The notes under the pieces were generated by a model. It saw only the letters and a program-made list of their open reading frames with translations. It made no database searches and had not been told where the DNA came from. DNA of 64,000 nt, taken from positions 62,001 through 126,000 of the IMG/VR virus record IMGVR_UViG_3300046003_007892, one strand, 5' to 3'. Below, one piece after another: positions 4,479-55,909 of this stretch; position 1 is the stretch's first letter; every line of letters begins with the position of its first letter. Made by a program: the position numbers and the translations under genes.

Positions 4479-5162
4479 CTAATGTTCCTCGAACGGCCCG
4501 ACGTGCGTTCGAACCGCTTGTGCATCGTAGACGTAGGCGAGATCGTCGTAGTGGGTCAGGTGCAGGACCATCATGTCAGCCGCCGAGGTGACGGCGATGA
4601 TGGCCTCGTCGCGCCGGGGTTCTCCCCCACCATGATACATGTGCGACAGGCGAATCTCGGACACCATCTTGGTCATCGTATGCGGTATGGCGGCCAGGAG
4701 GTCTTCGATGTTCTCGGGACGGAGCACCACCAAATGCGTGAAGGGAAAGCCGCGCAGGATGAGCTTCTTGGCCGTCTGGCAGACGTGGAAGGGCGCCGCC
4801 TCGGCTGCGAAGTTCAAGAAAGGCGAGGGGTCCACCGGGGTGACATCGACTTCCCCTTTGAGGGTCGTCGTGACCTCGAACTCCTCCATGACCAACGTGG
4901 GCACGGGGGTCGTGCTCTGGAGGAGATGGGCGAGGATGAATTCCGCCCAGACCTGTTCGGTAGCCGCCCTCGTGCTCCAGCGGCGGCCACTGGCGTTGAA
5001 CTCAGGCACGATGTCGCGAGTTTCGTTGCAACGACTCAGGTAAAGTCCGGTCGCGGTGTCGCGGAGACGGAACTCCGACCGCTTGCCCACGGGGTGGGAC
5101 TTGAGCGAGGGCCGCCTCTTGCGGGGTTTGTAGTCGCAATCATCGATGGAGATGGCCTTCAT
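4479..5162 (-). CDS. hypothetical protein
   Basis: 227 aa. Confidence 0.7.
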   Translation of the reverse strand: MKAISIDDCDYKPRKRRPSLKSHPVGKRSEFRLRDTATGLYLSRCNETRDIVPEFNASGRRWSTRAATEQVWAEFILAHLLQSTTPVPTLVMEEFEVTTTLKGEVDVTPVDPSPFLNFAAEAAPFHVCQTAKKLILRGFPFTHLVVLRPENIEDLLAAIPHTMTKMVSEIRLSHMYHGGGEPRRDEAIIAVTSAADMMVLHLTHYDDLAYVYDAQAVRTHVGPFEEH

Positions 5163-18767: not shown

Positions 18768-19255
18768 GCCGTCATCCCGCGAAGTTGCAGCATGGCGGCC
18801 CGGTAGGACGGCATCTTGCTGGTATTGAAGTCGAGTTCGGACAGACCCGCCAACTGGAGGGCCGTGTAGACCATCTCGGGGTGGAGTTCCTTCGCGAGCA
18901 CGGCGACGAAATGATCGGCGATCTTGTAGTAGTCGTTGTGCTGGCCGAGGGGTGTGCGCAGCCTCTTCAGGCGCGCGATCACCACGCTGATGAGCGAGTA
19001 TTGGAGCGGCAGCGACATGCCCTTCAGGCTCACGGCGCGCTGTTCCAGGATGTCTTCGACGGCGTCGCCGAGTTCGATGTAGCCGAACTTGCGGGGCAGG
19101 GCGGTGATCTTCGTGACGATCATGCGCCCCTCGGCGAGGCGGCATTCCACGGTGTCGCCTTCATTGAGTTCCAGCGCGGCGGCGATCTGGTGCGGAACCG
19201 CGACGAGCGTGTCGCCCGTGCATTCGTCGTCGTAAATCTTGACTTGTTCGCGCAT
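18764..19255 (-). CDS. AbrB/MazE-like DNA-binding domain protein
   Basis: VAVPHQIAAALELNEGDTVECRLAEGRMIV. Confidence 0.65.
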   Translation of the reverse strand: MREQVKIYDDECTGDTLVAVPHQIAAALELNEGDTVECRLAEGRMIVTKITALPRKFGYIELGDAVEDILEQRAVSLKGMSLPLQYSLISVVIARLKRLRTPLGQHNDYYKIADHFVAVLAKELHPEMVYTALQLAGLSELDFNTSKMPSYRAAMLQLRGMTA

Positions 19256-19335
19256 CAGTTCCTCCGGTGTAGAGATCGAACTAAGCCCGATGCGAAATCT
19301 TGTCAAGCAAAAAGGGTTGACTGCGATAGCGATAA

Positions 19336-19617
19336 ATGGAAAATGATGAGATGAAAATCAGCCCCCGCACCTGCACCCACGTCTTCAGCGTCGCGAAGAA
19401 AACCCGGTTCTATGTTGACACGCTCGACCCCGTTTGGCCGGACGTTGAGAAGATGCTGAAGAAATGGCGCATCGGCAATGTGAACGGGCATTTCAACCTC
19501 GAACGCACTGCCGACATCATAGAGATGAACCTCGTGTTGGGAATCACCGGTAGCTATGAGCCCCTAGACGAGGAAGACCAGGAACTCGTCCGTGAAGCGT
19601 TCGCGCGTCTTACCTGA
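19336..19617 (+). CDS. hypothetical protein
   Basis: 93 aa. Confidence 0.55.
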   Translation: MENDEMKISPRTCTHVFSVAKKTRFYVDTLDPVWPDVEKMLKKWRIGNVNGHFNLERTADIIEMNLVLGITGSYEPLDEEDQELVREAFARLT

Positions 19618-19741
19618 CCAGCCTCACATGACAGTTGAGCCACATCCCGGCTTCCATGAGGCGTTTGGCCTCAATGGCGTTGCGGGCATCGACACGACCG
19701 CACTCGCGGCCATCAGCGGCCAGGATTTGATAGGTCTTCAT
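19610..19741 (-). CDS. 43 aa hypothetical protein (not in ORF track)
   Basis: GGAGA SD; MKTYQILAADGRECGRVDARNA... Confidence 0.5.
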   Translation of the reverse strand: MKTYQILAADGRECGRVDARNAIEAKRLMEAGMWLNCHVRLVR

Positions 19742-19790
19742 GACATTTCTCCGATTCTGGTTTAACCAGTAAAGGGTATGGGAGAAAGTG

Positions 19791-20324
19791 TCAATGGGAG
19801 GACAGTATCGGCCAGACGATTGGCCACAATGCGATAAGAGACGGGATGGCCACAGCGAAAACAGAAATATACACGGCTCGTTTGGCTGTTCGGTGTGCCC
19901 GCCTCGCTTCCAGATTTGCTGATCGAGCCTCTCTGTTAGCCTCTTCGGCTATGCGGTTCGCTTCATCCGCAAGGTGGATATTTTTTTCTTCCCGCGCCAC
20001 ACGCTCTTTTTCGGCAACCACCTCTGGTGCGTTCGCTGCCATGTTCTCAGCGGTTTGGATTCCGAGATCAGTGAGATAAAATCGGTTGCAAGACCCGTAT
20101 GTCCCGTGGGTCCAAAACCTAGGCTCGTCATTCAACAGACGAGCCTCGTCTCTCAGGCGCACCAGTCCAGCATTTTTGTGTTTGTCGAGAATGAAATCGT
20201 TTGTCTCGTTGTCGGTCGCCCCGCTCTCTAACGAGACCGCGTTCTTTCCGTGCAAGTAAACGATTATCGATTCATCAATTTTGTCCATAAACCCTTCGTA
20301 TCGCAGGAGGAGCATGATAGTCAA
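19791..20324 (-). CDS. membrane-anchored coiled-coil protein
   Basis: EANR repeats then C-terminal TM. Confidence 0.6.
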   Translation of the reverse strand: MTIMLLLRYEGFMDKIDESIIVYLHGKNAVSLESGATDNETNDFILDKHKNAGLVRLRDEARLLNDEPRFWTHGTYGSCNRFYLTDLGIQTAENMAANAPEVVAEKERVAREEKNIHLADEANRIAEEANREARSANLEARRAHRTAKRAVYISVFAVAIPSLIALWPIVWPILSSH

Positions 20325-20331
20325 AATAAAA

Positions 20332-20419
20332 TGGAGACTGCCGGAGGGCTCGAACCTCTGGACTTCCTGCCCGCTCTTTAGTGTCGCCAGTTTAGGAAAC
20401 TGGTGCGGGGACGGCAGTC
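20332..20419 (-). tRNA. atypical D-armless tRNA-like RNA, anticodon CCU (Arg)
   Basis: acceptor GACUGCC/GGCAGUC, U73, CCA; T-loop UUCGAGC; AC arm CCAGU-UUCCUAA-ACUGG; 9 nt in place of D-arm; 27 nt variable region. Confidence 0.55.
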
Positions 20420-20443
20420 GTAGCTCAACGATAAATAGGGAGT

Positions 20444-20977
20444 ATGAATATTGAACTACTCCAAGAATATATCGAGCAGGGTCTGTCCAGCTATCAGATC
20501 GCGGCCAAGACCAATAAGGCGGCGACGACCGTCCGATACTGGATAAAGAAGCACGGCCTCAGCATTTCAAAGCCTGATAAGCCGGATAACCATTGCGCCC
20601 GGTGCGACACCGTCAAGACCAGAGACGACTTCTACCAATACGACACCAAGCGGAGGACGACCTACTGTAAGCCCTGCATGGCGTCGTGGATGAAAGATCG
20701 CTGTCGGAAGCTCAAGGCCCTGGCGGTGGAATATGCGGGAGGCTGCTGCAAGGGCTGCGGCTACGACAAATATCAGGGTGCTCTAGACTTCCATCACCGG
20801 GACCCGGCGCAGAAGGATTTCTCCATTGCTGCCAACATGCGGCGCGGAGACCTCAGCGAGACCATGAAGGCCGAGATCGATAAGTGTGTTCTCCTTTGTG
20901 CTAACTGCCACCGCGAGGCTCACGGCGGACTACGGGATTGGAAGATGGAGGGCCCTGAGAGAATCGAACTCTCGTGA
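20444..20977 (+). CDS. HNH homing endonuclease with HTH and Zn-finger
   Basis: ALDFHHRDP, LLCANCHREAH; TAAATA-N6-ATG; antisense inside tRNA operon. Confidence 0.9.
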   Translation: MNIELLQEYIEQGLSSYQIAAKTNKAATTVRYWIKKHGLSISKPDKPDNHCARCDTVKTRDDFYQYDTKRRTTYCKPCMASWMKDRCRKLKALAVEYAGGCCKGCGYDKYQGALDFHHRDPAQKDFSIAANMRRGDLSETMKAEIDKCVLLCANCHREAHGGLRDWKMEGPERIELS

Positions 20978-21019
20978 AGTGATTAAAAGTCACCTATTCT
21001 GCCATTGAATTAAGGGCCC
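20946..21019 (-). tRNA. tRNA-Lys(UUU), canonical length
   Basis: loop CUUUUAA, U73, CCA. Confidence 0.9.
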
Positions 21020-21022
21020 ATC

Positions 21023-21116
21023 TGGAGAACGCGGTGGGACTCGAACCCACGGGGTCAGGCTTGCACCTGTTACGGGCTTAAAAGGCCCGGCCTCTCGCCA
21101 CTGAGGTGACGCGTCC
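21023..21116 (-). tRNA. tRNA-Lys(UUU) with long variable arm
   Basis: 94 nt; CGGGC-CUUUUAA-GCCCG; V-arm CAGGU-GCAA-GCCUG; U73, CCA. Confidence 0.8.
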
Positions 21117-21130
21117 GTTCAGAAGAAACT

Positions 21131-21217
21131 TGGAGGATTGGATGGGACTCGAACCCATGATGAGCTTACGCTAGCGGGGTAAGAACCCGCGCCTCTCGCC
21201 GCTGAGGTGACCAATCC
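21131..21217 (-). tRNA. tRNA-Lys(CUU) with long variable arm
   Basis: 87 nt; GCGGG-UUCUUAC-CCCGC; V-arm AGC-GUAA-GCU; U73, CCA. Confidence 0.8.
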
Positions 21218-21235
21218 GAGAAGTGGTGTGGGTGG

Positions 21236-21311
21236 TGGTGAACGCGCTCGGGTTCGAACCGAGGACCAACAGATTAAGAGTCTGTCGCTCTACCAACTGA
21301 GCTACGCGTCC
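21236..21311 (-). tRNA. tRNA-Lys(CUU), canonical
   Basis: loop CUCUUAA, A73, CCA. Confidence 0.93.
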
Positions 21312-21386
21312 GTTACCACGGAAGGATTTGTTGGGAGCGTCATGGCTTCAAGCACACGAACGAAACCCGGCCACAGCTTTTGGCTG

Positions 21387-21428
21387 TTACCTGGATTTCC
21401 GTTTCGAGAAGGTGCGAAGCGAGGTCAT
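21387..21428 (-). CDS. candidate leader peptide MTSLRTFSKRKSR of tRNA operon 2
   Basis: ATG 8 nt after TAAATA; ends AAA CGG AAA TCC AGG TAA. Confidence 0.55.
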   Translation of the reverse strand: MTSLRTFSKRKSR

Positions 21429-21436
21429 GATGTTTG

Positions 21437-21466
21437 TATTTAGCCTGAGGGCTGCGTTTCTGTCAA
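21437..21466 (-). promoter_or_regulatory. tRNA operon 2 promoter
   Basis: TTGACA-N16-GCTAAATA. Confidence 0.75.
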
Positions 21467-21483
21467 TAAGTTTTTTCGACTGG

Positions 21484-21981
21484 TTAGACGATTGCGGTTC
21501 CGCCGTTCGTCAGTCTGATCTCAGACCCGGCGATGAGGCAGAGTTCGTCCTCCCGGTGGAAGTCCCAGAAGATGCCCCGCACCACGCTGCCCAGCCAGTC
21601 GATGGTGGAGTGGTCAATGTAAGCTTCCAAGATGGGACCGCCGTTGGCGAACTGCTCGGCCATGTCTGGGTTGACGGTCCAGTGCACGCCCAAGGGTTCT
21701 CGGGGTTTTTCAGTCTCGCGGAAGCCCCGATACATAATCTCCTGGCGGGCGTATGCAGCCACGTGGGCCTTGGCGTCACCGGTCATACTCACGAGCCACT
21801 GGTCTAGGGCATCTCGATTTCCGCCGAACATGTGCTCGATGCCGCCTTCGGTCCACCCGATCTGTTCTTTGTAACAGTCATGGACGTCGCCGTTCGCGGG
21901 GTCCCGCGAGTAGGCGATCACTTTCTCGGCGGTGACGTTAGCCAGTCCGGCCGTTTCCATGAGATCGATGTAGGCGCGCAT
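21484..21981 (-). CDS. late protein with capsid-targeting-like N-terminus, possibly ART-like
   Basis: TAAATA-N5-ATG; MRAYIDLMET; MYRGF..LGVHWT..A..FA. Confidence 0.7.
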   Translation of the reverse strand: MRAYIDLMETAGLANVTAEKVIAYSRDPANGDVHDCYKEQIGWTEGGIEHMFGGNRDALDQWLVSMTGDAKAHVAAYARQEIMYRGFRETEKPREPLGVHWTVNPDMAEQFANGGPILEAYIDHSTIDWLGSVVRGIFWDFHREDELCLIAGSEIRLTNGGTAIV

Positions 21982-21994
21982 GCACCTATTTAGA

Positions 21995-22399
21995 TCAGGC
22001 GGAGACGATTTCTTTTTCGAGATAACGCTTGGCCATCTCGGCGTAGATGCGCTTCATGACGCCGACCATCTCGATAGCGTTCTGCATCTCGCGGTGAGCG
22101 ATCAGGATGTCGGCGTACAGGAGGGCTTCCTCGCGGGTCTCGAAGGCGCGGTCGCGCTGCATGTAGACGTCGTGGCCGTAGCCGTCGTGGAAGACGTAGA
22201 CGCTCGCCTCACCGTAGCCGTTGCACATGCTCTCGCTGCCGTCCGGGATGATCTCGCCTTCGAACGTGGTGTGCTCGGCCACATAGCCGGTCTCGGGCTC
22301 CTTGACTTCCCAGAAACGAATCGGGACGAAGAAGAGGCGCGTGCCCACGGCCCAGCCAGTGGTGTTGATGGGCGAGACAGTGGTGCGCGGCGTTTCCAT
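21995..22399 (-). CDS. hypothetical protein
   Basis: ATG 5 nt after TTGACA-N16-TAAACA. Confidence 0.7.
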   Translation of the reverse strand: METPRTTVSPINTTGWAVGTRLFFVPIRFWEVKEPETGYVAEHTTFEGEIIPDGSESMCNGYGEASVYVFHDGYGHDVYMQRDRAFETREEALLYADILIAHREMQNAIEMVGVMKRIYAEMAKRYLEKEIVSA

Positions 22400-22442
22400 A
22401 AGGGTGTTTTAGACCATTGGGGAAACTTGTCAAGTAAATAAA

Positions 22443-22751
22443 TCAGCACATTTGGACTGGGCGGTCCTTGCCGAACGAACCGCCGATTGGTTCGAGGACG
22501 TCGCGGATATCGCGCAGATTGACCCCGACTTTGAGGCGAACCATCATGAAGGGGTCGAAGCCCGTGGTTGTCATCTGACGAGCAATATAGGGGCGGAGCT
22601 TCATCATCGCCTCGTGATTGGCCCCGGTGATAATCCAGTTCCACTCCGCGTCTTCTTCGGTCACGAAGTAAGACATGAAATCGTTGGGCCTCGGGCTGGG
22701 GCCGCGAGGATTGTCGGTGAAATCGGCATCATGGCCTTCGTAAGGTCTCAT
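22443..22751 (-). CDS. hypothetical protein
   Basis: 102 aa, coupled. Confidence 0.6.
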   Translation of the reverse strand: MRPYEGHDADFTDNPRGPSPRPNDFMSYFVTEEDAEWNWIITGANHEAMMKLRPYIARQMTTTGFDPFMMVRLKVGVNLRDIRDVLEPIGGSFGKDRPVQMC

Positions 22752-23014
22752 GCATTATCCTCGAACTTGACTACAATCCCGGTGTCGAACGTGAGGCGAT
22801 GTTCGACCATGTCACTGTCTGACAACTGGGCAAACAGGACGACGACGTCCAGCGTCACATCGCCATTGAGAACTTCTATCTGACCGGTGCCGATAACATA
22901 CTTCAACCCTCGTTCGACCACGAAGGCTTTGTGCTCAGTCTCGGCGACCGAGACCAACATGTTGGCGGGCAGGTTGGGACTATTGACGTCTTCACCCTTC
23001 GCACGAAGACCCAT
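22748..23014 (-). CDS. hypothetical protein (start uncertain)
   Basis: MGLRAKGED... Confidence 0.55.
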   Translation of the reverse strand: MGLRAKGEDVNSPNLPANMLVSVAETEHKAFVVERGLKYVIGTGQIEVLNGDVTLDVVVLFAQLSDSDMVEHRLTFDTGIVVKFEDNA

Positions 23015-23370: not shown

Positions 23371-24195
23371 TCAAATCTCTTCTTCGCTCAGGTCGGCAGA
23401 GTCGGCGCGGAATTCTTTTGCGAAGATGGACTTGATGTTCTTGGGGTCGAACACGAGCCACCAGTGACTGCTCTCGTAATCCCGAGAGCCATGATCGGCC
23501 AGCGTGTCGGAGATGTAGATACCGTCATAACCCTCGGCCATGATGGCGGCTTTGAACTCGTCTACTTCCTGGTCGTTCGACTTCACGCCACGGGGCAGAT
23601 GGGCCAGCAGGCGATGCCAGCCGTCCGTGCGCTGATAGCTGGCTTCCAACGCTCTGACTTCCCTGCCCAGCAATTCGTAGCGGGCCCGGTCAAAGGGCTG
23701 CCCGTCAGATTTGGCCATGAAGGTCGAACCGCCGTCTTCAGTTTTGAGGCCACGTTCGTTTTCCCGACCGCTGGCGTTGTATCGTTTGTGGAGGGCGTAA
23801 TACTCACGCATCTTGTCGGCGTCATCGCCCCACAGTCCCTCGGAATCCATATAGAGGGGCTTGGTGACCCGGAGGAAGCAGGGCATCACGTTTCCTCCGC
23901 CACCCGCACCAGCGGGCAGAGAATCGGTTCGATCACTGGCGACGCCCGCGAAATAGCTGGGAGTTCTCGGGTCCACGTCGAACCAGAACCCGAGACGGTT
24001 GAAGCCGTAGGACTTTCGGTTCTCCGATGCGTGCTTGAACTCCGTCACGTCTTCGAAGGTGCCGTGATAGCAGACGACTGGATGGCCATCGCCGTCTACG
24101 ACCTTGCTGCCCTGAAACCACCGCTGGAATCCTGGATGCTGGAGAACCCGCTCAACGGGGTTGGCAGCTTCGACGAGGTCGATCAGATCACGCAT
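23371..24195 (-). CDS. ART-PolyVal-like ADP-ribosyltransferase, late
   Basis: WFQGSKVVD..P..YHGT, GFWF, GYDGIYI, VFDPKNIKS; TAAATA-N4-ATG; MRDLIDLVEA. Confidence 0.75.
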   Translation of the reverse strand: MRDLIDLVEAANPVERVLQHPGFQRWFQGSKVVDGDGHPVVCYHGTFEDVTEFKHASENRKSYGFNRLGFWFDVDPRTPSYFAGVASDRTDSLPAGAGGGGNVMPCFLRVTKPLYMDSEGLWGDDADKMREYYALHKRYNASGRENERGLKTEDGGSTFMAKSDGQPFDRARYELLGREVRALEASYQRTDGWHRLLAHLPRGVKSNDQEVDEFKAAIMAEGYDGIYISDTLADHGSRDYESSHWWLVFDPKNIKSIFAKEFRADSADLSEEEI

Positions 24196-24202
24196 GGCGT
24201 AT

Positions 24203-24706
24203 TTATTCGGAGCGGAAGACGATGTCGGACGCATTCACACGCAAGACCGGTGGCATCTTGACGATCACCTCATCTTGGGCTCGCATCTTCGTGAACGGTT
24301 GGGCCTCTTCGTCAAAACGGACGAGGTCGCAGAACTCGTCCAGACCTTCCTTCTTGATCACGACATAGGCGGAGTCGAAGCCGAACATGAAATCGGTTGC
24401 GCTGTCTTGTTCACTCGACCAACTAGCAAGCGGTCTCCCCGCCGAGATAATGTCGAAGAAACCATTTTGGCGCAGGCTTTCTTTCTGGGCCCGGTCGGGC
24501 ATGTAGCCTCGATAGAGGGCGGCATGACCAGAGGTGAAGTGGTTGGCAGTCGCTTCCAGAGCCAGGAGATCGTTCTGGACCTCGTCCATGTCACCGCAGA
24601 CCCAGGTCGAAAGCGCACGACATAGGAGCTTCACCTGCGGGTCAGGATGCTGGCAGGATTGCCAGTGCGGTTTGGCAGTCTCCATGAGGACGTCGATGTA
24701 TCGCAT
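24203..24706 (-). CDS. late protein with capsid-targeting-like N-terminus, possibly ART-like
   Basis: TAAATA-N4-ATG; MRYIDVLMET; LYRG..ASWS..A.DF..QDEV. Confidence 0.7.
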   Translation of the reverse strand: MRYIDVLMETAKPHWQSCQHPDPQVKLLCRALSTWVCGDMDEVQNDLLALEATANHFTSGHAALYRGYMPDRAQKESLRQNGFFDIISAGRPLASWSSEQDSATDFMFGFDSAYVVIKKEGLDEFCDLVRFDEEAQPFTKMRAQDEVIVKMPPVLRVNASDIVFRSE

Positions 24707-44827: not shown

Positions 44828-44907
44828 CCTGTTAACTCCTCGCACTACTTTCGCGCGTGGGGATAAATACGCCTGTCTATATCCATGCTGGATATCTTGG
44901 GTCTTCG

Positions 44908-46167
44908 ATGTTTTTTGGAAAAAAGAAGCGAGCGGCAGCCGCGAAGGCTGCTCACGATAGCATGGTCCGCGACCTGGACCGTGACCGCAAGCTTGCCGAA
45001 AGCCAACGGGCTCTCCTAAACGCTGCCCTCACGACCGCCGATACCGCCCAGGAAGTCACCGCCAAACTTCGTAGTCGCCTCGACGATATCGTCAACCAGT
45101 TCGATGCCACCTCTCGCCTTCTCAAGGACGCCCTCGTCATCTGCAACATCCTCGGAGAGATCACGGCTTTCAACCCTGCCGCAGAACTCCTGTTCGGTAT
45201 TCCACATGATGACGCAATTGGATTGCCGGTCATGGACCTCTTCCGCAAAGCGCAGGGCAACGAGGAGATCGCCGATCTTGCCAGCCTGTGGATTCTGCTC
45301 AAAAACGAAGACCAGACCGACGTCATTGGCGCCAACGGTGACAAGCGTTTCCCGGTTCAGACAAGCCTATCCATGCTGGACCGCCACGATGGCTCCTCGG
45401 TCATCCTCCTGCTCGTTCAGGACCAGAGCACTGCCGTCATGGCCAGTCGCAGCGAGCGCAAATACGATTCCCTGTTCGCTTCCAGCTTCGACGGCGTCCT
45501 GGTCGTCTACAAGGGTCGTATCGTGGCCGCCAACCCGGCAACGACGCGCCTGTTCGGATATCCCACGGAGCAGCTTTTGAACGAGCCACTGTTCATGCTC
45601 GTCCACGCCAGACACGCTAACCGGCTTCTCACCTCCAGGCTCCTCCCAGACGGTATGAAATCACCTTCGCAGAACTTCATCATCGAAGGGGTGCACAGCA
45701 GCACCCGGACCTTGAGTCTGATGTTCGCCACCACCCCCATTGAATGGGACAACGCGACGGCACTCCTCATCACAATCAAGGACGTGACGGAACTCCAGCG
45801 TCTGGAAACAGTGTTGGGCGTGAAGAGTTCCAACGGCGAAATGATCGTTTGTTTCGGAACCGATTATATCGTCACCTTTGCAAACAAGATGTTCATGGAT
45901 GTCCACGGGCCCGTGGCAATAGGCTGCGATATTCGCGTCATCCTGGCGCCGGACCAAATGGAGGTCTTTGAAGCCAACACGAAAAAACTCTCATCCGAGA
46001 ACTCGTCAGTGCGATCTCATACCCGCCATGTCCGGGATGATGGGACGGTATACTTCCAGGACTGGATTGATAATGCCGTGTTTGACCAATGCGGTAGTCC
46101 AATCGAATATCAACGAATTGGACGAACGATCAGCGATGCCCTTTCGAGCGCGATCAGAGACGATTGA
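44908..46167 (+). CDS. multi-PAS domain protein without output domain
   Basis: PAS-type FNPAAELLFG, ANPATTRLFGY, ANKMFMDVHG. Confidence 0.8.
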   Translation: MFFGKKKRAAAAKAAHDSMVRDLDRDRKLAESQRALLNAALTTADTAQEVTAKLRSRLDDIVNQFDATSRLLKDALVICNILGEITAFNPAAELLFGIPHDDAIGLPVMDLFRKAQGNEEIADLASLWILLKNEDQTDVIGANGDKRFPVQTSLSMLDRHDGSSVILLLVQDQSTAVMASRSERKYDSLFASSFDGVLVVYKGRIVAANPATTRLFGYPTEQLLNEPLFMLVHARHANRLLTSRLLPDGMKSPSQNFIIEGVHSSTRTLSLMFATTPIEWDNATALLITIKDVTELQRLETVLGVKSSNGEMIVCFGTDYIVTFANKMFMDVHGPVAIGCDIRVILAPDQMEVFEANTKKLSSENSSVRSHTRHVRDDGTVYFQDWIDNAVFDQCGSPIEYQRIGRTISDALSSAIRDD

Positions 46168-47964: not shown

Positions 47965-48308
47965 CGTGTCACCCGGTAGTCGTTGACCTCGTAGCCGCCG
48001 TGCAGCCATGTTGCGCAGACAACGCCGCGAACCGAACGCCCGTCGATGTTCTTCGCCGTGTAGCCCCGGAAAACGTCCTTGCCCTTGCTGCACCGCGCGT
48101 TGTCGCCTGTGCGGAACAGTTGCGCGCCGACGTCCTCCATGAGGACGACTTCCGTGTAGCCGCGATTGGCGAGTTCGGTCTTGGCCTGATCATCGGATAT
48201 TCGGGCGGTAAGCTGAAGATAGCAGATGACGCAGACGGCAACGAACACGGCGACTGTGAGGACGCCCATGGCATAGGCTGCGGCGATGGGGACTGGTCTG
48301 CTGGCCAT
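47961..48308 (-). CDS. membrane-anchored protein
   Basis: N-terminal TM. Confidence 0.6.
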   Translation of the reverse strand: MASRPVPIAAAYAMGVLTVAVFVAVCVICYLQLTARISDDQAKTELANRGYTEVVLMEDVGAQLFRTGDNARCSKGKDVFRGYTAKNIDGRSVRGVVCATWLHGGYEVNDYRVTR

Positions 48309-48817
48309 CAGTCGTTGCTCACCAGCGGAAAGCGGCCGATCAGGACGTCGAGTTCGGGCTTGAGGCCGAACACGTAGGCGGTCGTGGTCTCCTCGGTGAA
48401 ACATACGTGCTGCTCACGACCGGCCGGACGCGGTGGCATGGTGTGCAGGCTGGCATCCAGACGGGGGACCAGTTCATTGGGAACCAGATAGGGATAGGTG
48501 GGGTCCACGACCGGGTCGGCGATGTAGCCCAGACCCTGAGCGGCTTCGACGACCGCCTTCATGGTGTCGAGACCGGGAACGGCCAGCGTCAAGGTGGTGC
48601 CGAAGCGTCCCGCCTGCGCGCGCCATTCCATGACGGCCTTGTTGGGCTTGTCGCCGCGCAGCAGCGGCGCGATGATCATGTCGTCGGTCAGGGCGTTGCA
48701 GGCATGGCCGATTTGGGCACCGCCCTTGCCATACTTCATGCTCGCCATGTCGGTGCGGACCAGGACGTACAGAATCCAGTCCTTCGGGGCGGCGACGATC
48801 TTGGGCTTCTTGGCCAT
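48308..48817 (-). CDS. PTH2-family peptidyl-tRNA hydrolase-like protein
   Basis: YVLVRTDM..GKGGAQIGHA..TTTAYVFG. Confidence 0.7.
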   Translation of the reverse strand: MAKKPKIVAAPKDWILYVLVRTDMASMKYGKGGAQIGHACNALTDDMIIAPLLRGDKPNKAVMEWRAQAGRFGTTLTLAVPGLDTMKAVVEAAQGLGYIADPVVDPTYPYLVPNELVPRLDASLHTMPPRPAGREQHVCFTEETTTAYVFGLKPELDVLIGRFPLVSND

Positions 48818-50665: not shown

Positions 50666-51040
50666 TCAGCTAGAAATTTTGATTTCTACTTCTTTCGGAA
50701 AGTTGATCTCGTCTTCGTCGAAAGCCAGTCTGATTTTCGCAGCTTGTTTGTCTGAGAACGTTGCCACCGAGCCGTCAGCGTTGTAGCCGAAGTTGATCGG
50801 GAAGCACTGAATAGCCCGCAAGCGGGCTTTGACCTCTTTGAACTCAGAAGCGTTGAAAACGCCGGGGAACTCAACGATGGTGATGCCAGGACGAACGCGA
50901 GGGGAGAACTCATTCCACCCCGTCAGAACCTGGAAGGAACTCCGTGTGCGACGACGAACAGGCGCGTTCGACCGAGCGATCACGCGCTCGTGCATGCGCC
51001 GGTCAAAGCTGGCCTGCTTGCTGCTCCACGTCGATTTCAT
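50666..51040 (-). CDS. hypothetical protein
   Basis: MKSTWSS, ATGA coupling. Confidence 0.6.
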   Translation of the reverse strand: MKSTWSSKQASFDRRMHERVIARSNAPVRRRTRSSFQVLTGWNEFSPRVRPGITIVEFPGVFNASEFKEVKARLRAIQCFPINFGYNADGSVATFSDKQAAKIRLAFDEDEINFPKEVEIKISS

Positions 51041-52233
51041 TCCGTGACCTCGTTCCAACCCCAGCGGACGCCGCCCCAAAGGTGGCGCACGAGATCAACG
51101 CGAGTAGCCGAACCCAGATGCTTGGCCACGACCCGGTGTCCAACCTCGACCGGGTCTTGCCCGTCGAAGATCGAGAACATCATCGTCCTGTCGAGTCCGT
51201 CCACGTCCTTGATCGCCAGCGCGAGGTCCCGCTTGGAATATCCGGCATACTGCTCGGCGACGCGTTTGGCCAGAGCCTCCATGTAGGTCGAGATGCCTTT
51301 CTGGACCGCGTCCGCGTAATCGACCACGCGCTGACGGTCGTCTGCCGCCAGCAGGGGCAGGGTGTCGTCGATCTTGTCCTCAAGGATGAGGGCCAAGACG
51401 TTCTTCTCGCTTGAGAGGTTGTCCTTGGCGGCATGCATGATGCAATATTCGTCGGCCTTGACCTTCAGCTTGTGGCCGTTCTGGAACGCGATCACCCAGC
51501 CCTCGGTCTCGACGAGGTCGCGGGTTTCGGTGACGAAATCGTTTACGTCGTGCAGGCTCCCAGGACGTCGCTGGACAAGCTCAACGCGGTGGAAGTCGCA
51601 CAGGTCGCCAAGATACCCGAAGTCGCTGTAGACCCCCGTATCGTTGTCGCGGATGGCCAGCAAGACCAGACGGTCTACCGGGTGGTCGATGACGATGCGC
51701 TGTTGGCGCGAACACCATTCGAAGATCGGGGTTTTGTTTTCGCTCACGCATTCTCGCGCAAGCCCCTCGTAGCGGAGATTGCGTTCAACGAACCGATCAA
51801 CCTGGAGGGCAATATCGGTGAGACCCATTTTGGTCGCCCACCGCATTCCACCAGACGTCGGCAATGGAGTGATCATGCTACCGTCCATCTTTTCTAGGAT
51901 GTCACAGTTTTCGCTCCAGTCAACATTTTGTGTAAGGACTTCCGGGCGTTCGTTGAGGTTGAAGAACTTGTGGAACTTCCGGTTCACTACTTTGCCAGTC
52001 GCCTTTGAGAAAGTCAGGCCACGGCACTCGCGCAGAATCGCATACTCGCGATCTTCCTCGCGGTCGCCAGAGAACGCCGGGAAAGTTCCAGAGAAACTGA
52101 TCAGGTAGTTGAAGAGGACAAAGTCGCCACGGTCGGCTTCAATGAAGACCTGGGTGCCCAGCCGGGCGTTGTGGCGCGCAACTACTCCGCTGACCTCAGC
52201 CAGGGACATGTCATGGGGAAATTCGTAAAACAT
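51037..52233 (-). CDS. T4 Rnl1-type RNA ligase
   Basis: ECRGL, HKFFN, EKMDGS, EGWV, KVK. Confidence 0.9.
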   Translation of the reverse strand: MFYEFPHDMSLAEVSGVVARHNARLGTQVFIEADRGDFVLFNYLISFSGTFPAFSGDREEDREYAILRECRGLTFSKATGKVVNRKFHKFFNLNERPEVLTQNVDWSENCDILEKMDGSMITPLPTSGGMRWATKMGLTDIALQVDRFVERNLRYEGLARECVSENKTPIFEWCSRQQRIVIDHPVDRLVLLAIRDNDTGVYSDFGYLGDLCDFHRVELVQRRPGSLHDVNDFVTETRDLVETEGWVIAFQNGHKLKVKADEYCIMHAAKDNLSSEKNVLALILEDKIDDTLPLLAADDRQRVVDYADAVQKGISTYMEALAKRVAEQYAGYSKRDLALAIKDVDGLDRTMMFSIFDGQDPVEVGHRVVAKHLGSATRVDLVRHLWGGVRWGWNEVTE

Positions 52234-53268: not shown

Positions 53269-53877
53269 TTACAGGCTCTTGAGGGCAGCCCGGTCGGTGA
53301 TGACGTGATCGACGATGCCCCAGGCCTGCGCCTCGGTGGCGGACATGAAGTTGTCGCGGTCCATGGCGGGCTCGACGACTTCCAAGGGTTGGCCGGTGTC
53401 TTCGACGACCATCTGGTTGAGCATCGCCTTCAGCTTCTGGATTTCCTTGAACTGGATTTCGATATCCGAAGCCATGCCGCGCGCGCCGCCGCTGGGCTGG
53501 TGAATCATGACGCGAGCGTTCGGCAGGCAGTAACGCTTGCCCTTGGTTCCCGACATGAGAAGCATGGCACCCATGCTGCACGCCTGCCCGGTGCAGATCG
53601 TCTGCACGTCGTTGGAGATGAAGCGGAGGGTATCGCGGATAGCGAGGCCCGCAGTGACGACACCACCCGGCGAGTTGATGTAGAGGGCGATATCCTTCTT
53701 GGAATCTTCGCTTTCCAGGAAGAGGAGTTGGGCGACGATCAGGTTGGCCATGTGGTCTTCGACTGGGCCATTCAGGAAGATGATGCGCTCGCGCAGGAGG
53801 CGAGAGAAGATATCGAAGGACCGTTCGCCACGGCTCGATTGCTCGACGACCATGGGGACGAGGGTGTTGGATGTCAT
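53269..53877 (-). CDS. clpP: ClpP protease subunit
   Basis: [25 protein letters not shown]. Confidence 0.95.
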
Positions 53878-53894
53878 GTGGGAGGGTTCCGAAC

Positions 53895-54185
53895 TCAAAA
53901 ACTAAGGTTATCTTTCCACTGGATTTCCCCGTCGAGCATGCGAAACAGCATGAGATCGGCGACGTCTTCGAAGTAGACTACGGCTTTTCTGGAGAGTTGA
54001 ATGATTCCGAACCGTCCTGGAATATTTTTTGCCACCCATGCAACTAGCGGCCGGACATTATGATTCGAGTAATCGATTTCGAGTCGCTCCCATGAAGGCG
54101 GGAAAGGCCCGGACACCCACCGTTCCGCCAACATTTCGCGGGGGTAGACATCGAGTTCAGTAAAGTAGACCGGTTCAGGGGTCAT
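53895..54185 (-). CDS. hypothetical protein
   Basis: ends [15 protein letters not shown]. Confidence 0.65.
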
Positions 54186-54349: not shown

Positions 54350-55909
54350 GTGGGACGTAATCCGCTAACGAAGACCTTCGACCACCAAACCGAAGAGACT
54401 TCCATCTATCAGGCCTGGGAAACCAGTGGCGCCTTCAAGCCATCAGGCAAAGGGGAACCCTATTTCCTCCCCATGCCCCCGCCGAACATCACCGGCATTC
54501 TGCATATGGGCCACGCCCTGTTTGCAACCCTTCAGGACATCAGCACGCGATTCAACCGGATGCGGGGGCGCAATACCCTCTGGCTGCCGGGGACCGATCA
54601 CGCCGGGTTGGCCACGCAAGCCAAGCTGGACGAACTCATGATCGCTCAGGGGCTCGACCCGCAGGGACCGGAGTTCGACGCGTTCGCTGCCGACTACAAG
54701 GCCAACCTGAAGAGCACCATCACGGGTCAGCTTCGCCGTTGTGGCGCGTCTGCTGACTGGTCCAGAGAGACCTTCACGCTCGACGACGATTACAGCGCAG
54801 CCGTCATCGCCGCCATGGAGAAATGCCATGAGGCCGGGATGCTCTACCAGCGGGACGGCCAGTGGTGGCTCGACATGGAACCATTGGCGGCTGAACTCCT
54901 GTCCGAGATGGACGCGGGGAGCCTGGAGATCATTCCCTCGGGCGGTGAAGGCACGCTGCGCAACTTCCTGACCAAGATCGAGCCGTGGTGCATCAGCCGT
55001 CAAATCCGCTGGGGTCATCGTTTGCCGATCTGGAAACGGAACGGCATTCGCTCCGGCATCCAGCGCATCAACGAGTTCACGATCAGCGCGACCTGTCCGG
55101 GAGACCCCCAGGATTGGACGCAGGAAGAAGGATGTCTGGATACGTGGTTCTCTTCGGCCCTCTGGCCGTTCGCCACGCTGGGTTGGCCCAAAGACACTCC
55201 CGACATGCGGACCTTCTACCCGGCCGCCATGATCGAGACCGCCGACGACATCCTGTTCTTCTGGTGCGCCCGCATGCTCATGATGGGGCTCCTCCTGACT
55301 GACCAGATGGCCTTCAAGACAATCTTCCTGCACGGTCTCATCCGGGACAAGGACGGGCGCAAGATGGCCAAGTCCATCGGCAACGGCATCGACCCCCTAG
55401 ATATCATCGAGAAGTTCGGCTGCGACGCCATGCGGTTCGCTCTGGCCGAAGATGCCACGCCGGGCCAGGACATGCGGATGTGGGATGAAAAGTTCCAAGC
55501 CGCGAAGGGACTGCGGACCAAAATCTGGAACGCATCCCGGTATGCGATCTCGCACTGGGACCGCATCGGCCACGGTCGTCTCGCATTCCCGTCCCAGCAT
55601 CCCGATGACATCGCCATCCGGGCCCGGCTAGACGAAACCATCCAGGAAATGACTGCCATGCTAGAGGGGCTTCGCTACCACGAGGCCGCCTTCACCATTC
55701 GGCAGTTCATCTTCAATGACCTGTGCGGGACCTACATCGAGCAGACCAAGTCTCGGCTCTACGATGAGAATGACATGGCGGCCAACGCGACCCTCATGGA
55801 AACCCTCCATCAGACCCTACGTCTCCTCCACCCGTTCATGCCTTACGTCACGGAGAGGATTCGGGCAGCCTACTCGCCAGACCCCTTGATCACGACCGAC
55901 TGGGTGTAG
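54350..55909 (+). CDS. valS: valyl-tRNA synthetase, minimal (no CP1 editing domain)
   Basis: PPPNITGILHMGH, WCISRQ, LDTWFSS, KMAKS; 519 aa. Confidence 0.85.
   Translation: MGRNPLTKTFDHQTEETSIYQAWETSGAFKPSGKGEPYFLPMPPPNITGILHMGHALFATLQDISTRFNRMRGRNTLWLPGTDHAGLATQAKLDELMIAQGLDPQGPEFDAFAADYKANLKSTITGQLRRCGASADWSRETFTLDDDYSAAVIAAMEKCHEAGMLYQRDGQWWLDMEPLAAELLSEMDAGSLEIIPSGGEGTLRNFLTKIEPWCISRQIRWGHRLPIWKRNGIRSGIQRINEFTISATCPGDPQDWTQEEGCLDTWFSSALWPFATLGWPKDTPDMRTFYPAAMIETADDILFFWCARMLMMGLLLTDQMAFKTIFLHGLIRDKDGRKMAKSIGNGIDPLDIIEKFGCDAMRFALAEDATPGQDMRMWDEKFQAAKGLRTKIWNASRYAISHWDRIGHGRLAFPSQHPDDIAIRARLDETIQEMTAMLEGLRYHEAAFTIRQFIFNDLCGTYIEQTKSRLYDENDMAANATLMETLHQTLRLLHPFMPYVTERIRAAYSPDPLITTDWV

What the first reader, a model, noticed from the sequence alone, without database searches (positions are those of the whole stretch)
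21023..21217. Two tRNA-Lys with class-II long variable arms, each paired with a canonical isoacceptor
Seen: the 94-nt UUU and 87-nt CUU tRNAs carry GNRA-capped V-arms and U73. They share a near-identical D-arm (UCACCUCAGYGGCGAGAGGC) with 3 nt between acceptor and D stems. The long-arm UUU tRNA has the same acceptor stem (GGACGCG/CGCGUUC) as the canonical CUU tRNA. Established: long V-arms normally mark Leu/Ser/Tyr/Sec tRNAs, and SerRS/LeuRS largely ignore the anticodon. Inference: nuclease-resistant or decoy Lys tRNAs, or tRNAs that insert another amino acid at Lys codons.
Basis: partly seen in the sequence, partly recalled or inferred. Interest (0 to 1): 0.8.

Follow-up and report, generated by a model that had tools for sequence, protein, structure and literature searches.

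The report
Phage lysine tRNAs with extra arm
A lake-water giant phage carries two lysine tRNAs with an extra hairpin arm normally seen only in Ser/Leu/Tyr tRNAs; they belong to a widespread, apparently undescribed family in phages of Alphaproteobacteria (including the lab phage phiCbK) and most likely still carry lysine.

Summary
ARAGORN and Rfam call four tRNA-Lys genes on the minus strand at 20946-21311. The two middle ones (UUU, 94 nt; CUU, 87 nt) have GNRA-capped variable-arm hairpins, U73, an encoded CCA and a shared D arm behind a 3-nt connector.

They are not a one-off. The same body occurs in 49 distinct tRNA-Lys sequences: from IMG/VR jumbo phages, metagenome contigs, tRNA arrays in three alphaproteobacterial genomes, and phages of Caulobacter and Brevundimonas. 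In the phiCbK tRNA array the two long forms are the only tRNA-Lys. Covariation supports a 7/5 cloverleaf plus the extra helix.

The same body also carries Tyr, Asn and Cys anticodons. Other arrays hold arm-expanded Thr, Ile, Val, Asp and Asn copies next to normal-length copies. In these pairs the discriminator and upper acceptor stem follow the anticodon's amino acid.

I therefore read them as genuine lysine-decoding tRNAs on a tRNA-Tyr-like class II core, not Ser/Leu-inserting recoders. The purpose of the arm is unproven. My best guess is that it diversifies the phage's tRNA supply against tRNA-targeting host defences. No expression or charging data exist. I found no description in the searchable literature.

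The parts
21023..21116 (-). tRNA-Lys(UUU), long-arm form. 94 nt including the encoded CCA, 7/5 acceptor/T stems, 3-nt connector UCA, D arm CCUC-AGUGGCGA-GAGG, anticodon loop CUUUUAA, 22-nt variable region, G2:U71, U73.
   Evidence: ARAGORN; Rfam tRNA 45.9 bits; MFE is a five-armed cloverleaf; family model R1 83.7 bits.
21056..21069 (-). Variable-arm hairpin of the UUU form: 5-bp stem CAGGU/GCCUG capped by GCAA. It is flanked by UAA on the 5' side and ACCCC on the 3' side.
   Evidence: The same architecture with compensatory changes is seen in L006 (CAAGC/GCUUG) and L069 (CUGGC/GCCAG).
21131..21217 (-). tRNA-Lys(CUU), long-arm form. 87 nt including CCA, same connector and D arm (AGCGGCGA loop), anticodon loop UUCUUAC, 15-nt variable region, G2-C71, U73.
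   Evidence: ARAGORN; Rfam tRNA 44.8 bits; R1 99.7 bits.
21163..21172 (-). Variable-arm hairpin of the CUU form: 3-bp stem AGC/GCU capped by GUAA, followed by an unpaired CAUC tail.
   Evidence: All three pairs covary across the family (AGC/GCU, GUC/GAC, UGC/GCA, GAC/GUC, GGC/GCC).
20946..21019 (-). Canonical-length tRNA-Lys(UUU), 74 nt, U73, anticodon stem-loop 3' side UAAUCA.
   Evidence: (64.7 bits).
21236..21311 (-). Canonical-length tRNA-Lys(CUU), 76 nt, A73, with the same acceptor stem as the long UUU form. It resembles abundant cellular tRNA-Lys of the lake communities.
   Evidence: 71.7 bits. In one search about 900-1150x summed contig depth from other organisms lands on this gene only.
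20444..20977 (+). HNH endonuclease gene, convergent with the tRNA cluster. Its last 32 nt overlap the 3' end of the canonical tRNA-Lys(UUU) gene. Context only, not part of the tRNAs.
   Evidence: PHROG phrog_2255, HNH endonuclease, E=4e-34.

Best explanation
The two long genes are real elongator tRNAs that read AAA and AAG and are most likely charged with lysine by the host lysyl-tRNA synthetase. They belong to a large family of phage tRNAs built on a class II core like that of bacterial tRNA-Tyr. The family's hallmarks are a D loop AGYGGCGA, usually a 3-nt connector, a T loop UUCGAGU, and a variable region ending CAYC/CACC that usually carries a 3-bp GNRA-capped hairpin. The same core is used with Tyr, Asn, Cys and Lys anticodons, which points to origin by anticodon remoulding or module exchange inside phage tRNA arrays. 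Shown: the genes, their structure, the family and its covariation. Also shown: identity-relevant positions (discriminator, top of the acceptor stem) follow the anticodon. Inferred: expression as a four-tRNA polycistron and charging with lysine. Lysine identity rests mainly on the anticodon. The hosts that can be named are Alphaproteobacteria, and most of these have only a class I LysRS, for which the discriminator is of minor importance. More speculative: the extra arm is kept beside a canonical copy because it makes part of the phage's tRNA-Lys supply structurally unlike host tRNA-Lys. That copy would then survive host factors that destroy or disable tRNA-Lys, such as PrrC/RloC-like or AriB-like nucleases. 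On this view the tRNA quartet is a bet-hedging anti-defence set.
For: Genes and fold.

Family:
- The D-arm motif occurs in jumbo-phage contigs of 220-517 kb.
- A scaffold-plus-Lys-anticodon pattern hits 17 IMG/VR contigs, 3 alphaproteobacterial genome contigs and 30 metagenome contigs.
- blastn finds 23 Caulobacter and 7 Brevundimonas phage records.
- This gives 49 unique sequences: 25 UUU and 24 CUU, with a 3-nt connector in 46 of 49.

Structure under selection: 94.5% of cells paired, 20 of 24 pairs with double changes, 0 of 500 shuffles as good.

Slot filling: in the phiCbK tRNA array (44-58 kb of the genome) the two long forms are the only tRNA-Lys.

Core relationship: model R1, built from the Lys family, scores Lys-long 80-103 bits, Asn-long 73-83, Cys-long 75.6 and scaffold Tyr 67-75. 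Ser and Leu tRNAs of the same arrays score about 35-57.

Cognate identity:
- Long and short copies of the same isotype share N73 in 24 of 36 pairs, against 26% for different isotypes (15 of 16 when Lys is excluded).
- They share 3.8 of 6 bases at pairs 1-3:70-72, against 2.0 for different isotypes.
- In L004 the long and canonical CUU forms have identical acceptor stem, T arm and U73.
- U73 also occurs on canonical Lys bodies.
- G2:U71 or A2:U71 occurs in 10 of 49 family members. G2:U71 is the class I LysRS determinant in Borrelia, where A73 is marginal (PMC9976931).

Hosts: most Alphaproteobacteria, Caulobacter crescentus included, have only class I LysRS (PMC1475646).

Lys codons must mean Lys: the KMSKS motif of the phage CysRS and the KxDG motif of its RNA ligase use AAG.

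Anti-defence context:
- Phage tRNA-Lys is known to rescue infection from PrrC (PMC11555353) and from PARIS/AriB (PMC11464382; bioRxiv 10.1101/2025.02.04.636281).
- The window encodes a T4 RnlA-family RNA ligase and a PTH2-like hydrolase.
- At positions 36-41 the canonical UUU copy reads UAAUCA and the canonical CUU copy UAAUCU, whereas the long copies read UAAGCC and UACCCC.
- Full quartets (both anticodons, both shapes) recur in four huge phages.
Against: There is no expression, processing or aminoacylation evidence. No RNA run holds the locus. No promoter-like site was found by the simple scan.

The CUU form carries G1-C72, G2-C71, A3-U70 and C11-G24, which are E. coli seryl determinants. 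phiCbK tRNA-Ser(CGA) has U73. The phiCbK Ser(GGA) acceptor (GGAUGUA) is nearly the same as that of the phiCbK long CUU form (GGAUGUG). Mukai et al. (PMC5389517) took a long V arm plus G73/U73 as a seryl signature for allo-tRNAs.

Most family members keep U36-A-A-U-C, so the anticodon-stem differences in the window are not a family trait.

Known anticodon nucleases recognise mainly the anticodon stem-loop, where a V arm need not matter.

No polynucleotide kinase partner for the RNA ligase was found among the roughly 50 ORFs scanned.

Arm-expanded Asn, Asp and Thr tRNAs exist. Their synthetases are class II, so a class I LysRS is not needed to explain tolerance of the arm.
Confidence: 0.55

Rival explanations
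1. Tolerated relic. The long forms are ordinary lysine tRNAs that arose by anticodon mutation of a duplicated phage tRNA-Tyr/Asn-type gene. The arm has no function of its own and persists only because the host LysRS, EF-Tu and the ribosome tolerate it. Copies beside canonical ones merely add gene dosage.
For: The same core carries Tyr, Asn, Cys and Lys anticodons that are one or two substitutions apart. V-region length and pairing vary widely, from 7 to 22 nt, and about a third of members have no convincing stem. Kabachok-type Brevundimonas phages carry a degenerate copy with G18 and U55 lost.
Against: Where a stem exists it is maintained by compensatory changes and capped mostly by GNRA loops, which argues for selection on the hairpin. 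Long-plus-canonical pairs with the same anticodon recur in independent huge phages and in other isotypes.
Confidence: 0.22
2. Recoding or mistranslation. The long arm, together with G1-C72/G2-C71/A3-U70/C11-G24 and U73, makes these tRNAs substrates of SerRS (or of TyrRS or LeuRS). Serine or another residue is then inserted at some Lys codons during infection, as proposed for allo-tRNAs and shown in vitro for nematode V-arm tRNAs.
For: Seryl-type acceptor features, and similarity to the phage's own tRNA-Ser acceptor stems and U73. PMC5389517 reasons this way for allo-tRNAs. In GenBank record KY555145 (Ccr29) the UUU long form is annotated as tRNA-Ser.
Against: The arm is short (3 bp, with a 4-nt 3' tail), unlike the 5-bp, tightly flanked arms of the tRNA-Ser genes in the same arrays. 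Some members have no arm at all. Only the two Lys anticodons occur on this Lys-type acceptor. Sister tRNAs keep cognate discriminators. Canonical Lys tRNAs in the same arrays share GGA...UYC acceptors and U73. The phage's own catalytic lysines are encoded by AAG. In the phiCbK tRNA array the long forms are the only tRNA-Lys. The Ccr29 'Ser' call places the anticodon inside the anticodon stem, so it is an annotation artefact.
Confidence: 0.12
3. Non-translational role. The long forms act as decoys that titrate a tRNA-Lys-targeting nuclease, as ligands for a phage protein, or as regulators, rather than as substrates for the ribosome.
For: They are redundant with canonical copies in the window. 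GNRA loops often mediate RNA-RNA or RNA-protein contacts.
Against: All positions needed for a working tRNA are invariant or covary: U8, A14, G18 G19, U33, A37, the T loop, the G15:C48 partners, and the encoded CCA. In the phiCbK tRNA array they are the only tRNA-Lys.
Confidence: 0.08

Closest known systems
Bacterial class II tRNA-Tyr
   Same: Same D arm type (CCCG-AGCGGC..A-AGGG with G13:A22). Short 3-bp variable stem with 3-4 unpaired nucleotides on its 3' side. 7/5 acceptor/T stems. Phage tRNA-Tyr genes with exactly the family's D loop, 3-nt connector and T loop exist and score 67-75 bits on the Lys-family model.
   Different: The anticodon is UUU or CUU instead of GUA. The discriminator is U73 (or A73 or C73). 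The D loop is 8 nt rather than 9-10, and there is an extra connector nucleotide compared with E. coli tRNA-Tyr. The E. coli sequence is recalled from memory and was not re-fetched.
allo-tRNAs and other irregular tRNAs of Mukai et al. 2017 (PMC5389517)
   Same: Long V arm combined with anticodons outside Ser/Leu/Tyr. U73 or G73. Occurrence in tRNA clusters of phages of Alphaproteobacteria.
   Different: allo-tRNAs are defined by an 8/4 or 9/3 acceptor/T branch and a Sec-like long D stem with a tetraloop. The tRNAs here are 7/5 with a 4-bp D stem and an 8-nt loop. allo-tRNA bodies are uniform across 35 anticodons, whereas here the acceptor stem and discriminator change with the anticodon.
Nematode nev-tRNAs / eukaryotic nov-tRNAs (Hamashima et al.; cited in PMC5389517 ref. 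8; otherwise from my own knowledge)
   Same: tRNAs for normally class I isotypes that carry a long V arm.
   Different: Those are eukaryotic, keep the Leu-type body and are charged with leucine in vitro. Here the identity positions follow the anticodon, and the setting is phage tRNA arrays.
Phage tRNAs that neutralise tRNA-targeting defences: T5 tRNA-Lys against PARIS/AriB (PMC11464382; 10.1101/2025.02.04.636281); tRNA-Lys against PrrC and T5 tRNA-Tyr against retron-Eco7 (PMC11555353)
   Same: A phage-encoded tRNA-Lys that duplicates a host function but differs in sequence. In the window the long copies differ at positions 38/39-41, where the T5 changes (U39>A, A41>C) confer AriB resistance.
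   Different: The known cases are canonical class I-shaped tRNAs that escape through a few anticodon stem-loop substitutions or through overexpression. None has an added arm, and no defence system has been linked to the present family.
T4 Rnl1/Pnkp repair of PrrC-cleaved tRNA-Lys (established knowledge)
   Same: The window phage encodes a T4 RnlA-family RNA ligase, the enzyme family that reseals cleaved tRNA-Lys.
   Different: No Pnkp was found in the window. T4 Rnl1 also has a tail-fibre attachment role, and relatives are annotated that way. The link to the tRNAs is therefore circumstantial.

Membership tests
tRNA (functional cloverleaf) | Matches the tRNA covariance model; 7-bp acceptor and 5-bp T stem; conserved U8, A14, G18G19, U33 and T loop | tested here: met
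   Rfam RF00005 gives 45.9 and 44.8 bits against a gathering score of 29. ARAGORN calls both. Invariant columns and 100% pairing of the acceptor and T helices are seen across 27 members.
Class II (long variable arm) tRNA | Variable region of 10 nt or more that forms a helix | tested here: met
   The variable regions are 22 nt and 15 nt. The hairpins are predicted by folding. All three V-stem pairs covary. Family-wide the region is 7-22 nt, so a minority of relatives are not class II by this criterion.
tRNA-Lys | Anticodon UUU or CUU in a 7-nt loop with U33 and A37 | tested here: met
   The loops are CUUUUAA and UUCUUAC. The family holds 25 UUU and 24 CUU members, though the search pattern required YUU.
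tRNA-Lys | Discriminator A73 (E. coli class II LysRS identity set; PMC9976931) | tested here: not met
   Both long forms have U73. The canonical UUU copy of the same cluster and other canonical phage Lys tRNAs also have U73. For class I LysRS, A73 is reported as marginal (PMC9976931).
tRNA-Lys | G2:U71 (class I LysRS determinant in Borrelia; PMC9976931) | tested here: inconclusive
   G2:U71 is present in the long UUU form and the canonical CUU form and absent (G2-C71) in the long CUU form. Among 49 family members, 6 have G:U and 4 have A:U at 2:71. Whether alphaproteobacterial LysRS needs this pair is not known to me.
tRNA-Lys | Aminoacylation with lysine | not testable with these tools
   Requires charging assays or analysis of the amino acid attached in vivo.
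allo-tRNA (PMC5389517) | 8/4 or 9/3 acceptor/T branch | tested here: not met
   A 7-bp acceptor and 5-bp T stem are both 100% paired with covariation.
tRNA-Ser (bacterial identity set: long V arm, about 5-7 bp with 0-1 unpaired nt on the 3' side, G73, G2-C71, A3-U70, C11-G24; from PMC9976931, PMC7609411 and my own knowledge) | Ser-type arm geometry and G73 | tested here: not met
   Both long forms have U73. The CUU arm is 3 bp with a 4-nt 3' tail, and the UUU arm is 5 bp with 3 unpaired nt on the 5' side and 5 on the 3' side. tRNA-Ser genes of the same arrays have 5-bp arms flanked by single nucleotides, and they score only about 35-57 bits on the Lys-family model. The acceptor features G1-C72/G2-C71/A3-U70 and C11-G24 are met by the CUU form, so seryl charging is disfavoured but not excluded.
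tRNA-Sec | UCA anticodon, 8/5 branch, 6-bp D stem | tested here: not met
Anti-defence phage tRNA (nuclease-escape variant) | Resists a host tRNA-targeting effector that inactivates the host isoacceptor, and rescues infection | not testable with these tools
   Only circumstantial evidence exists: an RNA ligase in the window and differences from the AriB site at positions 38/39-41.

The most novel reading that the evidence does not exclude
Large phages maintain a parallel set of arm-expanded, class-II-shaped copies of normally class I tRNAs, often beside canonical copies with the same anticodon. The isotypes seen are Lys, Asn, Thr, Ile, Met, Val, Cys and Asp. The added hairpin would be a general device that shields phage tRNAs from host tRNA-targeting immunity, or earmarks them for a phage factor, while leaving cognate charging intact. 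For lysine this may have been made possible by the class I LysRS of alphaproteobacterial hosts.
Probability: 0.3. Interest if true: 0.85.

Novelty: new variant of a known kind. Interest (0 to 1): 0.68.

Why it matters
Textbooks and recent reviews restrict long variable arms in bacteria to tRNA-Ser, -Leu, -Tyr and -Sec (PMC7609411). A conserved, covarying family of class-II-shaped lysine tRNAs breaks that rule, and probably the Asn, Cys, Thr, Ile and Val versions do too. It raises concrete questions about how synthetases, modification enzymes and tRNA-targeting nucleases deal with an extra arm.

The family is present in phiCbK and its relatives, which infect the genetically tractable Caulobacter crescentus. 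Charging, processing and anti-defence roles can therefore be tested directly.

It also matters for annotation. The same gene is called tRNA-Lys, tRNA-Ser or nothing in different GenBank records.

If the arm proves to be a shield against tRNA-directed immunity, it would be a new mode of counter-defence, distinct from the anticodon-loop point mutations described so far. It would also offer a natural scaffold for engineering orthogonal tRNAs.

Tried and rejected
- Megablast of 19000-23000 against GenBank phages found nothing. The window phage has no close cultured relative.
- My first collection pattern had too large a gap (N28-52) and missed short-armed members. It cost one genome scan and was repeated with N16-42.
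- Literature searches for a long variable arm combined with tRNA-Lys or tRNA-Asn in phages found no description. Reviews of non-canonical tRNAs do not mention it.
- Expression: no RNA run holds the locus. Laying DNA contigs showed only that the cluster is identical in four lake metagenomes.
- The simple promoter scan found nothing, and the terminator-like hits were at chance level.
- I looked for a phage LysRS or a Pnkp partner among about 50 ORFs. I found CysRS, a short ValRS-like protein, an RNA ligase and a PTH2-like protein, but no LysRS and no kinase-phosphatase. About half of the small ORFs and the other roughly 176 kb of the phage were not examined.
- An 8/5 or 8/4 reading of the acceptor branch, and a 5-bp D stem that absorbs the third connector nucleotide, were both considered. 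The would-be extra pair is A:C, A:A, A:G, C:U or U:G in different members, so it does not covary. The 3-nt connector stands.
- The idea that only a class I LysRS could tolerate the arm was downgraded after arm-expanded Asn, Asp and Thr tRNAs, which are served by class II synthetases, turned up.
- The enrichment of U36 (ANN-decoding) isotypes among expanded tRNAs is 27 of 46 against 141 of 449. It is reported only as a lead, because the loci were collected with a scaffold-specific pattern and some ARAGORN calls may be false.
Full report
**1. The observation**

ARAGORN finds six tRNA genes in the window. Four are tRNA-Lys genes packed on the minus strand between 20946 and 21311. In the order of transcription they are:
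- canonical CUU (21311-21236, 76 nt, A73);
- long CUU (21217-21131, 87 nt);
- long UUU (21116-21023, 94 nt);
- canonical UUU (21019-20946, 74 nt, U73).

The spacers are 18, 14 and 3 nt. Rfam's tRNA model scores all four above its gathering threshold of 29 bits (71.7, 44.8, 45.9 and 64.7). It places the extra nucleotides of the long forms as insertions in the variable region.

- Both long forms have U73 and an encoded CCA.
- Three nucleotides (UCA) lie between the acceptor stem and the D stem.
- The D arm is CCUC-AGYGGCGA-GAGG.
- The variable-arm hairpins are capped by GCAA and GUAA.
- The long UUU form has the same acceptor stem (GGACGCG/CGCGUUC) as the canonical CUU form.

The minimum-energy fold of the UUU form is exactly the five-armed cloverleaf, and the CUU fold contains the V hairpin.

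**2. The setting**

The window has about 58% G+C and looks like part of a large phage. IMG/VR contig 3300046003_007892 (240,363 bp) carries the identical tRNA quartet. The sequence recurs almost unchanged in several lake-water metagenomes.

Elsewhere in the window are several translation and RNA-related genes:
- a CysRS;
- a 519-aa ValRS-like protein that appears to lack the editing domain;
- a T4 RnlA-family RNA ligase;
- a PTH2-like peptidyl-tRNA hydrolase;
- ClpP, an ART-PolyVal ADP-ribosyltransferase and an adenylate kinase.

An HNH endonuclease gene abuts the tRNA cluster. The best matches of the RNA ligase are in phages of Alphaproteobacteria: Ruegeria, Caulobacter, Rhizobium, Sinorhizobium and Agrobacterium.

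**3. A family, not an oddity**

The 18-nt D-arm motif occurs in seven IMG/VR contigs. Six are jumbo phages of 220-517 kb that carry long-arm tRNA-Lys.

A pattern combining the D arm, a YUU anticodon and the T loop hits 17 IMG/VR contigs and 30 metagenome contigs. It also hits three genome contigs, all alphaproteobacterial: a Methyloligellaceae MAG, Bradyrhizobium guangdongense and a Pseudomonadota MAG. Each hit lies inside a dense, prophage-like tRNA array.

blastn finds the pair in 23 records of Caulobacter phiCbK-like phages and 7 of Brevundimonas jumbo phages. In the phiCbK tRNA array, the 88- and 91-nt long forms are the only tRNA-Lys genes.

Annotation is inconsistent. Most records say tRNA-Lys. 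Ccr29 calls the UUU form 'tRNA-Ser, codon UCG', which places the anticodon inside the stem. Kabachok-type phages leave a degenerate copy unannotated.

Altogether I collected 49 distinct sequences:
- 25 have UUU and 24 have CUU.
- The discriminator is U in 32, A in 16 and C in 1.
- The connector is 3 nt in 46 of 49.
- The variable region is 7-22 nt.

**4. Structure under selection**

On an alignment of 27 members, 94.5% of cells form standard pairs (shuffled mean 69.9%). Twenty of 24 pairs show changes on both sides, no shuffle of 500 reaches the observed values, and sliding the partners collapses pairing to 38-50%.

The acceptor (7 bp) and T (5 bp) helices are 100% paired, so the branch is the canonical 7/5. 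All three pairs of the short V stem covary (AGC/GCU, GUC/GAC, UGC/GCA, GAC/GUC, GGC/GCC). The loops are mostly GNRA.

The 5-bp arm of the window's UUU form recurs with compensatory changes in L006 (CAAGC/GCUUG) and L069 (CUGGC/GCCAG), always between UAA and (A/U)CCCC.

The candidate extra pair that would absorb the third connector nucleotide does not covary. The 3-nt connector is therefore real.

**5. What the body is**

The D arm (CCCG-AGYGGCGA-AGGG, with G13:A22 in many members), the 3-bp V stem and its four unpaired 3' nucleotides resemble bacterial tRNA-Tyr rather than tRNA-Ser or tRNA-Leu.

I repeated the collection scan with the anticodon left free. It returned the same body with four kinds of anticodon:
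- Tyr GUA with A73 (many);
- Asn GUU, 85-94 nt, with G73;
- Cys GCA, 87 nt, with U73;
- a Ser GCU.

A covariance model built only from the Lys family scores as follows:

| tRNA group | R1 score (bits) |
|---|---|
| Lys-long | 80-103 |
| Asn-long | 73-83 |
| Cys-long | 75.6 |
| Scaffold Tyr | 67-75 |
| Canonical Lys | 33-60 |
| Ser and Leu of the same arrays | about 35-57 |

Other arrays hold arm-expanded Thr(UGU), Ile(GAU), Val(UAC), Met(CAU), Asp(GUC) and Arg(ACG) genes. Some of these arrays resemble the 630-640-kb uncultured huge phages LR756502 and LR745206. The expanded genes often sit next to a normal-length gene with the same anticodon.

**6. Which amino acid?**

No tool here can measure charging, so the argument is comparative.

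(a) Long and short genes of the same isotype in the same array share the discriminator in 24 of 36 pairs, against 26% for different isotypes (15 of 16 when Lys is left out). They also share on average 3.8 of the 6 bases at pairs 1-3:70-72, against 2.0. Thr keeps G1-C72/C2-G71, Asn keeps U1-A72/G73, Val keeps A73 and Cys keeps U73. The arm is therefore added without changing the positions that synthetases read.

(b) U73 is not special to the long Lys forms. Three canonical Lys tRNAs also have it: the UUU copy in the window and the CUU copies in L004 and L009. In L004 the long and canonical CUU forms have the same acceptor stem, T arm and U73.

(c) The arm itself varies from absent to 5 bp on a constant body. 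That is not how an identity element behaves.

(d) The tRNA-Ser genes of these arrays have 5-bp arms flanked by single nucleotides, a different geometry.

(e) The phage's own catalytic lysines (CysRS KMSKS, ligase KxDG) are AAG codons. Lys codons make up 4.3% of codons in the larger predicted genes, with 465 AAG and 221 AAA.

(f) Every host that can be named is an alphaproteobacterium. Most Alphaproteobacteria, Caulobacter crescentus included, have only a class I LysRS (PMC1475646). For that enzyme, studied in Borrelia, U35/U36 and G2:U71 matter and A73 is marginal (PMC9976931). G2:U71 is present in the window's long UUU and canonical CUU forms.

Against this, the CUU form carries seryl-type acceptor features (G1-C72, G2-C71, A3-U70, C11-G24). 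phiCbK tRNA-Ser(CGA) has U73. Mukai et al. read a long arm plus G73/U73 as a seryl signature for allo-tRNAs (PMC5389517). I put cognate lysylation at roughly 0.7 and mischarging at roughly 0.1.

**7. Why keep an arm?**

This part is inference. Four independent huge phages keep the full quartet of both anticodons in both shapes: the window/L001, L004, L006 and L021. Other isotypes show the same doubling. That suggests the two shapes are not redundant.

The current view of phage tRNAs is that they replace host tRNAs destroyed by defence nucleases. Examples are tRNA-Lys against PrrC and PARIS/AriB, and tRNA-Tyr against retron-Eco7 (PMC11555353, PMC11464382). AriB cuts between positions 40 and 41 at U36-A-A-U-C|A. 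It targets Lys(UUU), Thr(UGU) and Asn(GUU), and it also reads features outside the anticodon loop (bioRxiv 10.1101/2025.02.04.636281).

In the window the canonical UUU copy has exactly UAAUCA at positions 36-41, and the canonical CUU copy has UAAUCU. The long copies have UAAGCC and UACCCC.

An arm emerging next to the 3' strand of the anticodon stem could also hinder an enzyme that binds there. The phage's RnlA-type ligase fits a tRNA-repair theme.

Three caveats apply. Most family members retain UAAUC. No Pnkp was found. No defence system is known for these hosts. The neutral-relic alternative therefore keeps substantial weight.

**8. Comparison with known kinds**

These are tRNAs, class II by shape and Lys by anticodon. 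They are not allo-tRNAs (7/5 rather than 8/4 or 9/3), not tRNA-Sec, and not Ser-type in arm geometry.

The nearest relatives in sequence are phage tRNA-Tyr, -Asn and -Cys genes on the same core. The nearest in concept are allo-tRNAs and nematode V-arm tRNAs (a long arm on the 'wrong' anticodon) and the nuclease-escape tRNAs of T5.

I found no paper describing class-II-shaped tRNA-Lys, or the wider set of arm-expanded phage tRNAs, in the searchable library. Subscription literature could not be searched. The genes themselves have been in GenBank since 2012 under the plain label tRNA-Lys.

**9. Verdict**

This is a new structural variant of a known kind of molecule. It is widespread in phages of Alphaproteobacteria and experimentally accessible through phiCbK and Caulobacter. 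Interest is moderate to high.

The main uncertainties are charging and the function of the arm. Both can be decided by standard tRNA biochemistry and phage genetics.

Noticed in passing
window 54350-55909 (+): A ValRS-like class I synthetase of only 519 aa. It matches valine--tRNA ligase profiles in two stretches, with the best covering profile positions about 352-686 of 860. It appears to lack the CP1 editing domain, so it may be an editing-deficient phage ValRS.
   Followed up: partly
window 56716-58272 (-): A full-length cysteinyl-tRNA synthetase (TIGR00435, 473.6 bits against a cutoff of 340) encoded by the phage. It has an N-terminal extension of about 70 aa.
   Followed up: partly
window 51037-52233 (-) and 48308-48817 (-): A T4 RnlA-family RNA ligase, whose best relatives are in phages of Alphaproteobacteria, and a PTH2-like peptidyl-tRNA hydrolase. 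Together they suggest a tRNA repair or recycling theme. No polynucleotide kinase-phosphatase was found among the ORFs scanned.
   Followed up: partly
window 20444-20977 (+): An HNH endonuclease gene, convergent with the tRNA cluster. Its last 32 nt overlap the canonical tRNA-Lys(UUU) gene. This recalls the homing endonucleases found in other phage tRNA regions.
   Followed up: partly
L026, L027, L031, L042, L045, L049 (e.g. L027:7359-7443, L027:8121-8207, L045:1310-1395, L042 Asp 87 nt): Arm-expanded (83-95 nt) versions of Thr(UGU), Asn(GUU), Ile(GAU), Val(UAC), Met(CAU), Asp(GUC), Cys(GCA) and Arg(ACG) tRNAs. They often sit beside a normal-length gene with the same anticodon and the same discriminator. 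Isotypes with U36 are over-represented (27 of 46 against 141 of 449), but the sample is biased.
   Followed up: partly
L024:4001-4091 (Brevundimonas phage Kabachok; four further Brevundimonas phages gave identical-scoring unannotated hits): An unannotated long-arm tRNA-Lys(CUU) relative with a degenerate D loop (AGUAGCGA, G18 lost) and T loop (UGCGAGU, U55 lost). ARAGORN does not call it, but the family model gives 79.6 bits. It may be a decaying copy.
   Followed up: partly
L081:396-486 (Caulobacter phage Ccr29, KY555145): The long-arm UUU tRNA is annotated in GenBank as 'tRNA-Ser, codon recognized UCG'. Ccr32 shows the same tRNA-Ser label (its note not checked). These are annotation artefacts caused by the extra arm.
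   Followed up: yes
window 21236-21311: In four lake metagenomes the canonical tRNA-Lys(CUU) gene attracts about 900-1150x summed contig depth from other organisms at 85% likeness or more. The long-arm genes attract far less. The canonical copy is therefore host-like, and the long forms are phage-specific.
   Followed up: partly
L014:690-767, L016:2912-2988 and 4963-5038, L019:1016-1092: tRNAs with stop-codon anticodons (UCA, called 'SeC'; CUA, called 'Pyl') sit in the same arrays as long-arm tRNA-Lys. They may be suppressor tRNAs of phages with recoded stop codons.
   Followed up: no
window 23371-24234 (-), 58306-61049 (-), 44857-46167 (+), 53269-53898 (-): An ART-PolyVal ADP-ribosyltransferase; a DUF2201 metallopeptidase/VWA protein next to an AAA_5-like ATPase; a tandem PAS-domain protein; and a ClpP protease. 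These are typical accessory genes of very large phages.
   Followed up: no
L007:3002-3089, L005:11075-11162, L024:4885-4972: The tRNA-Ser(CGA) genes of phiCbK-like and Brevundimonas phages have U73 instead of the usual G73. The tRNA-Ser(GGA) gene next to them has G73.
   Followed up: no
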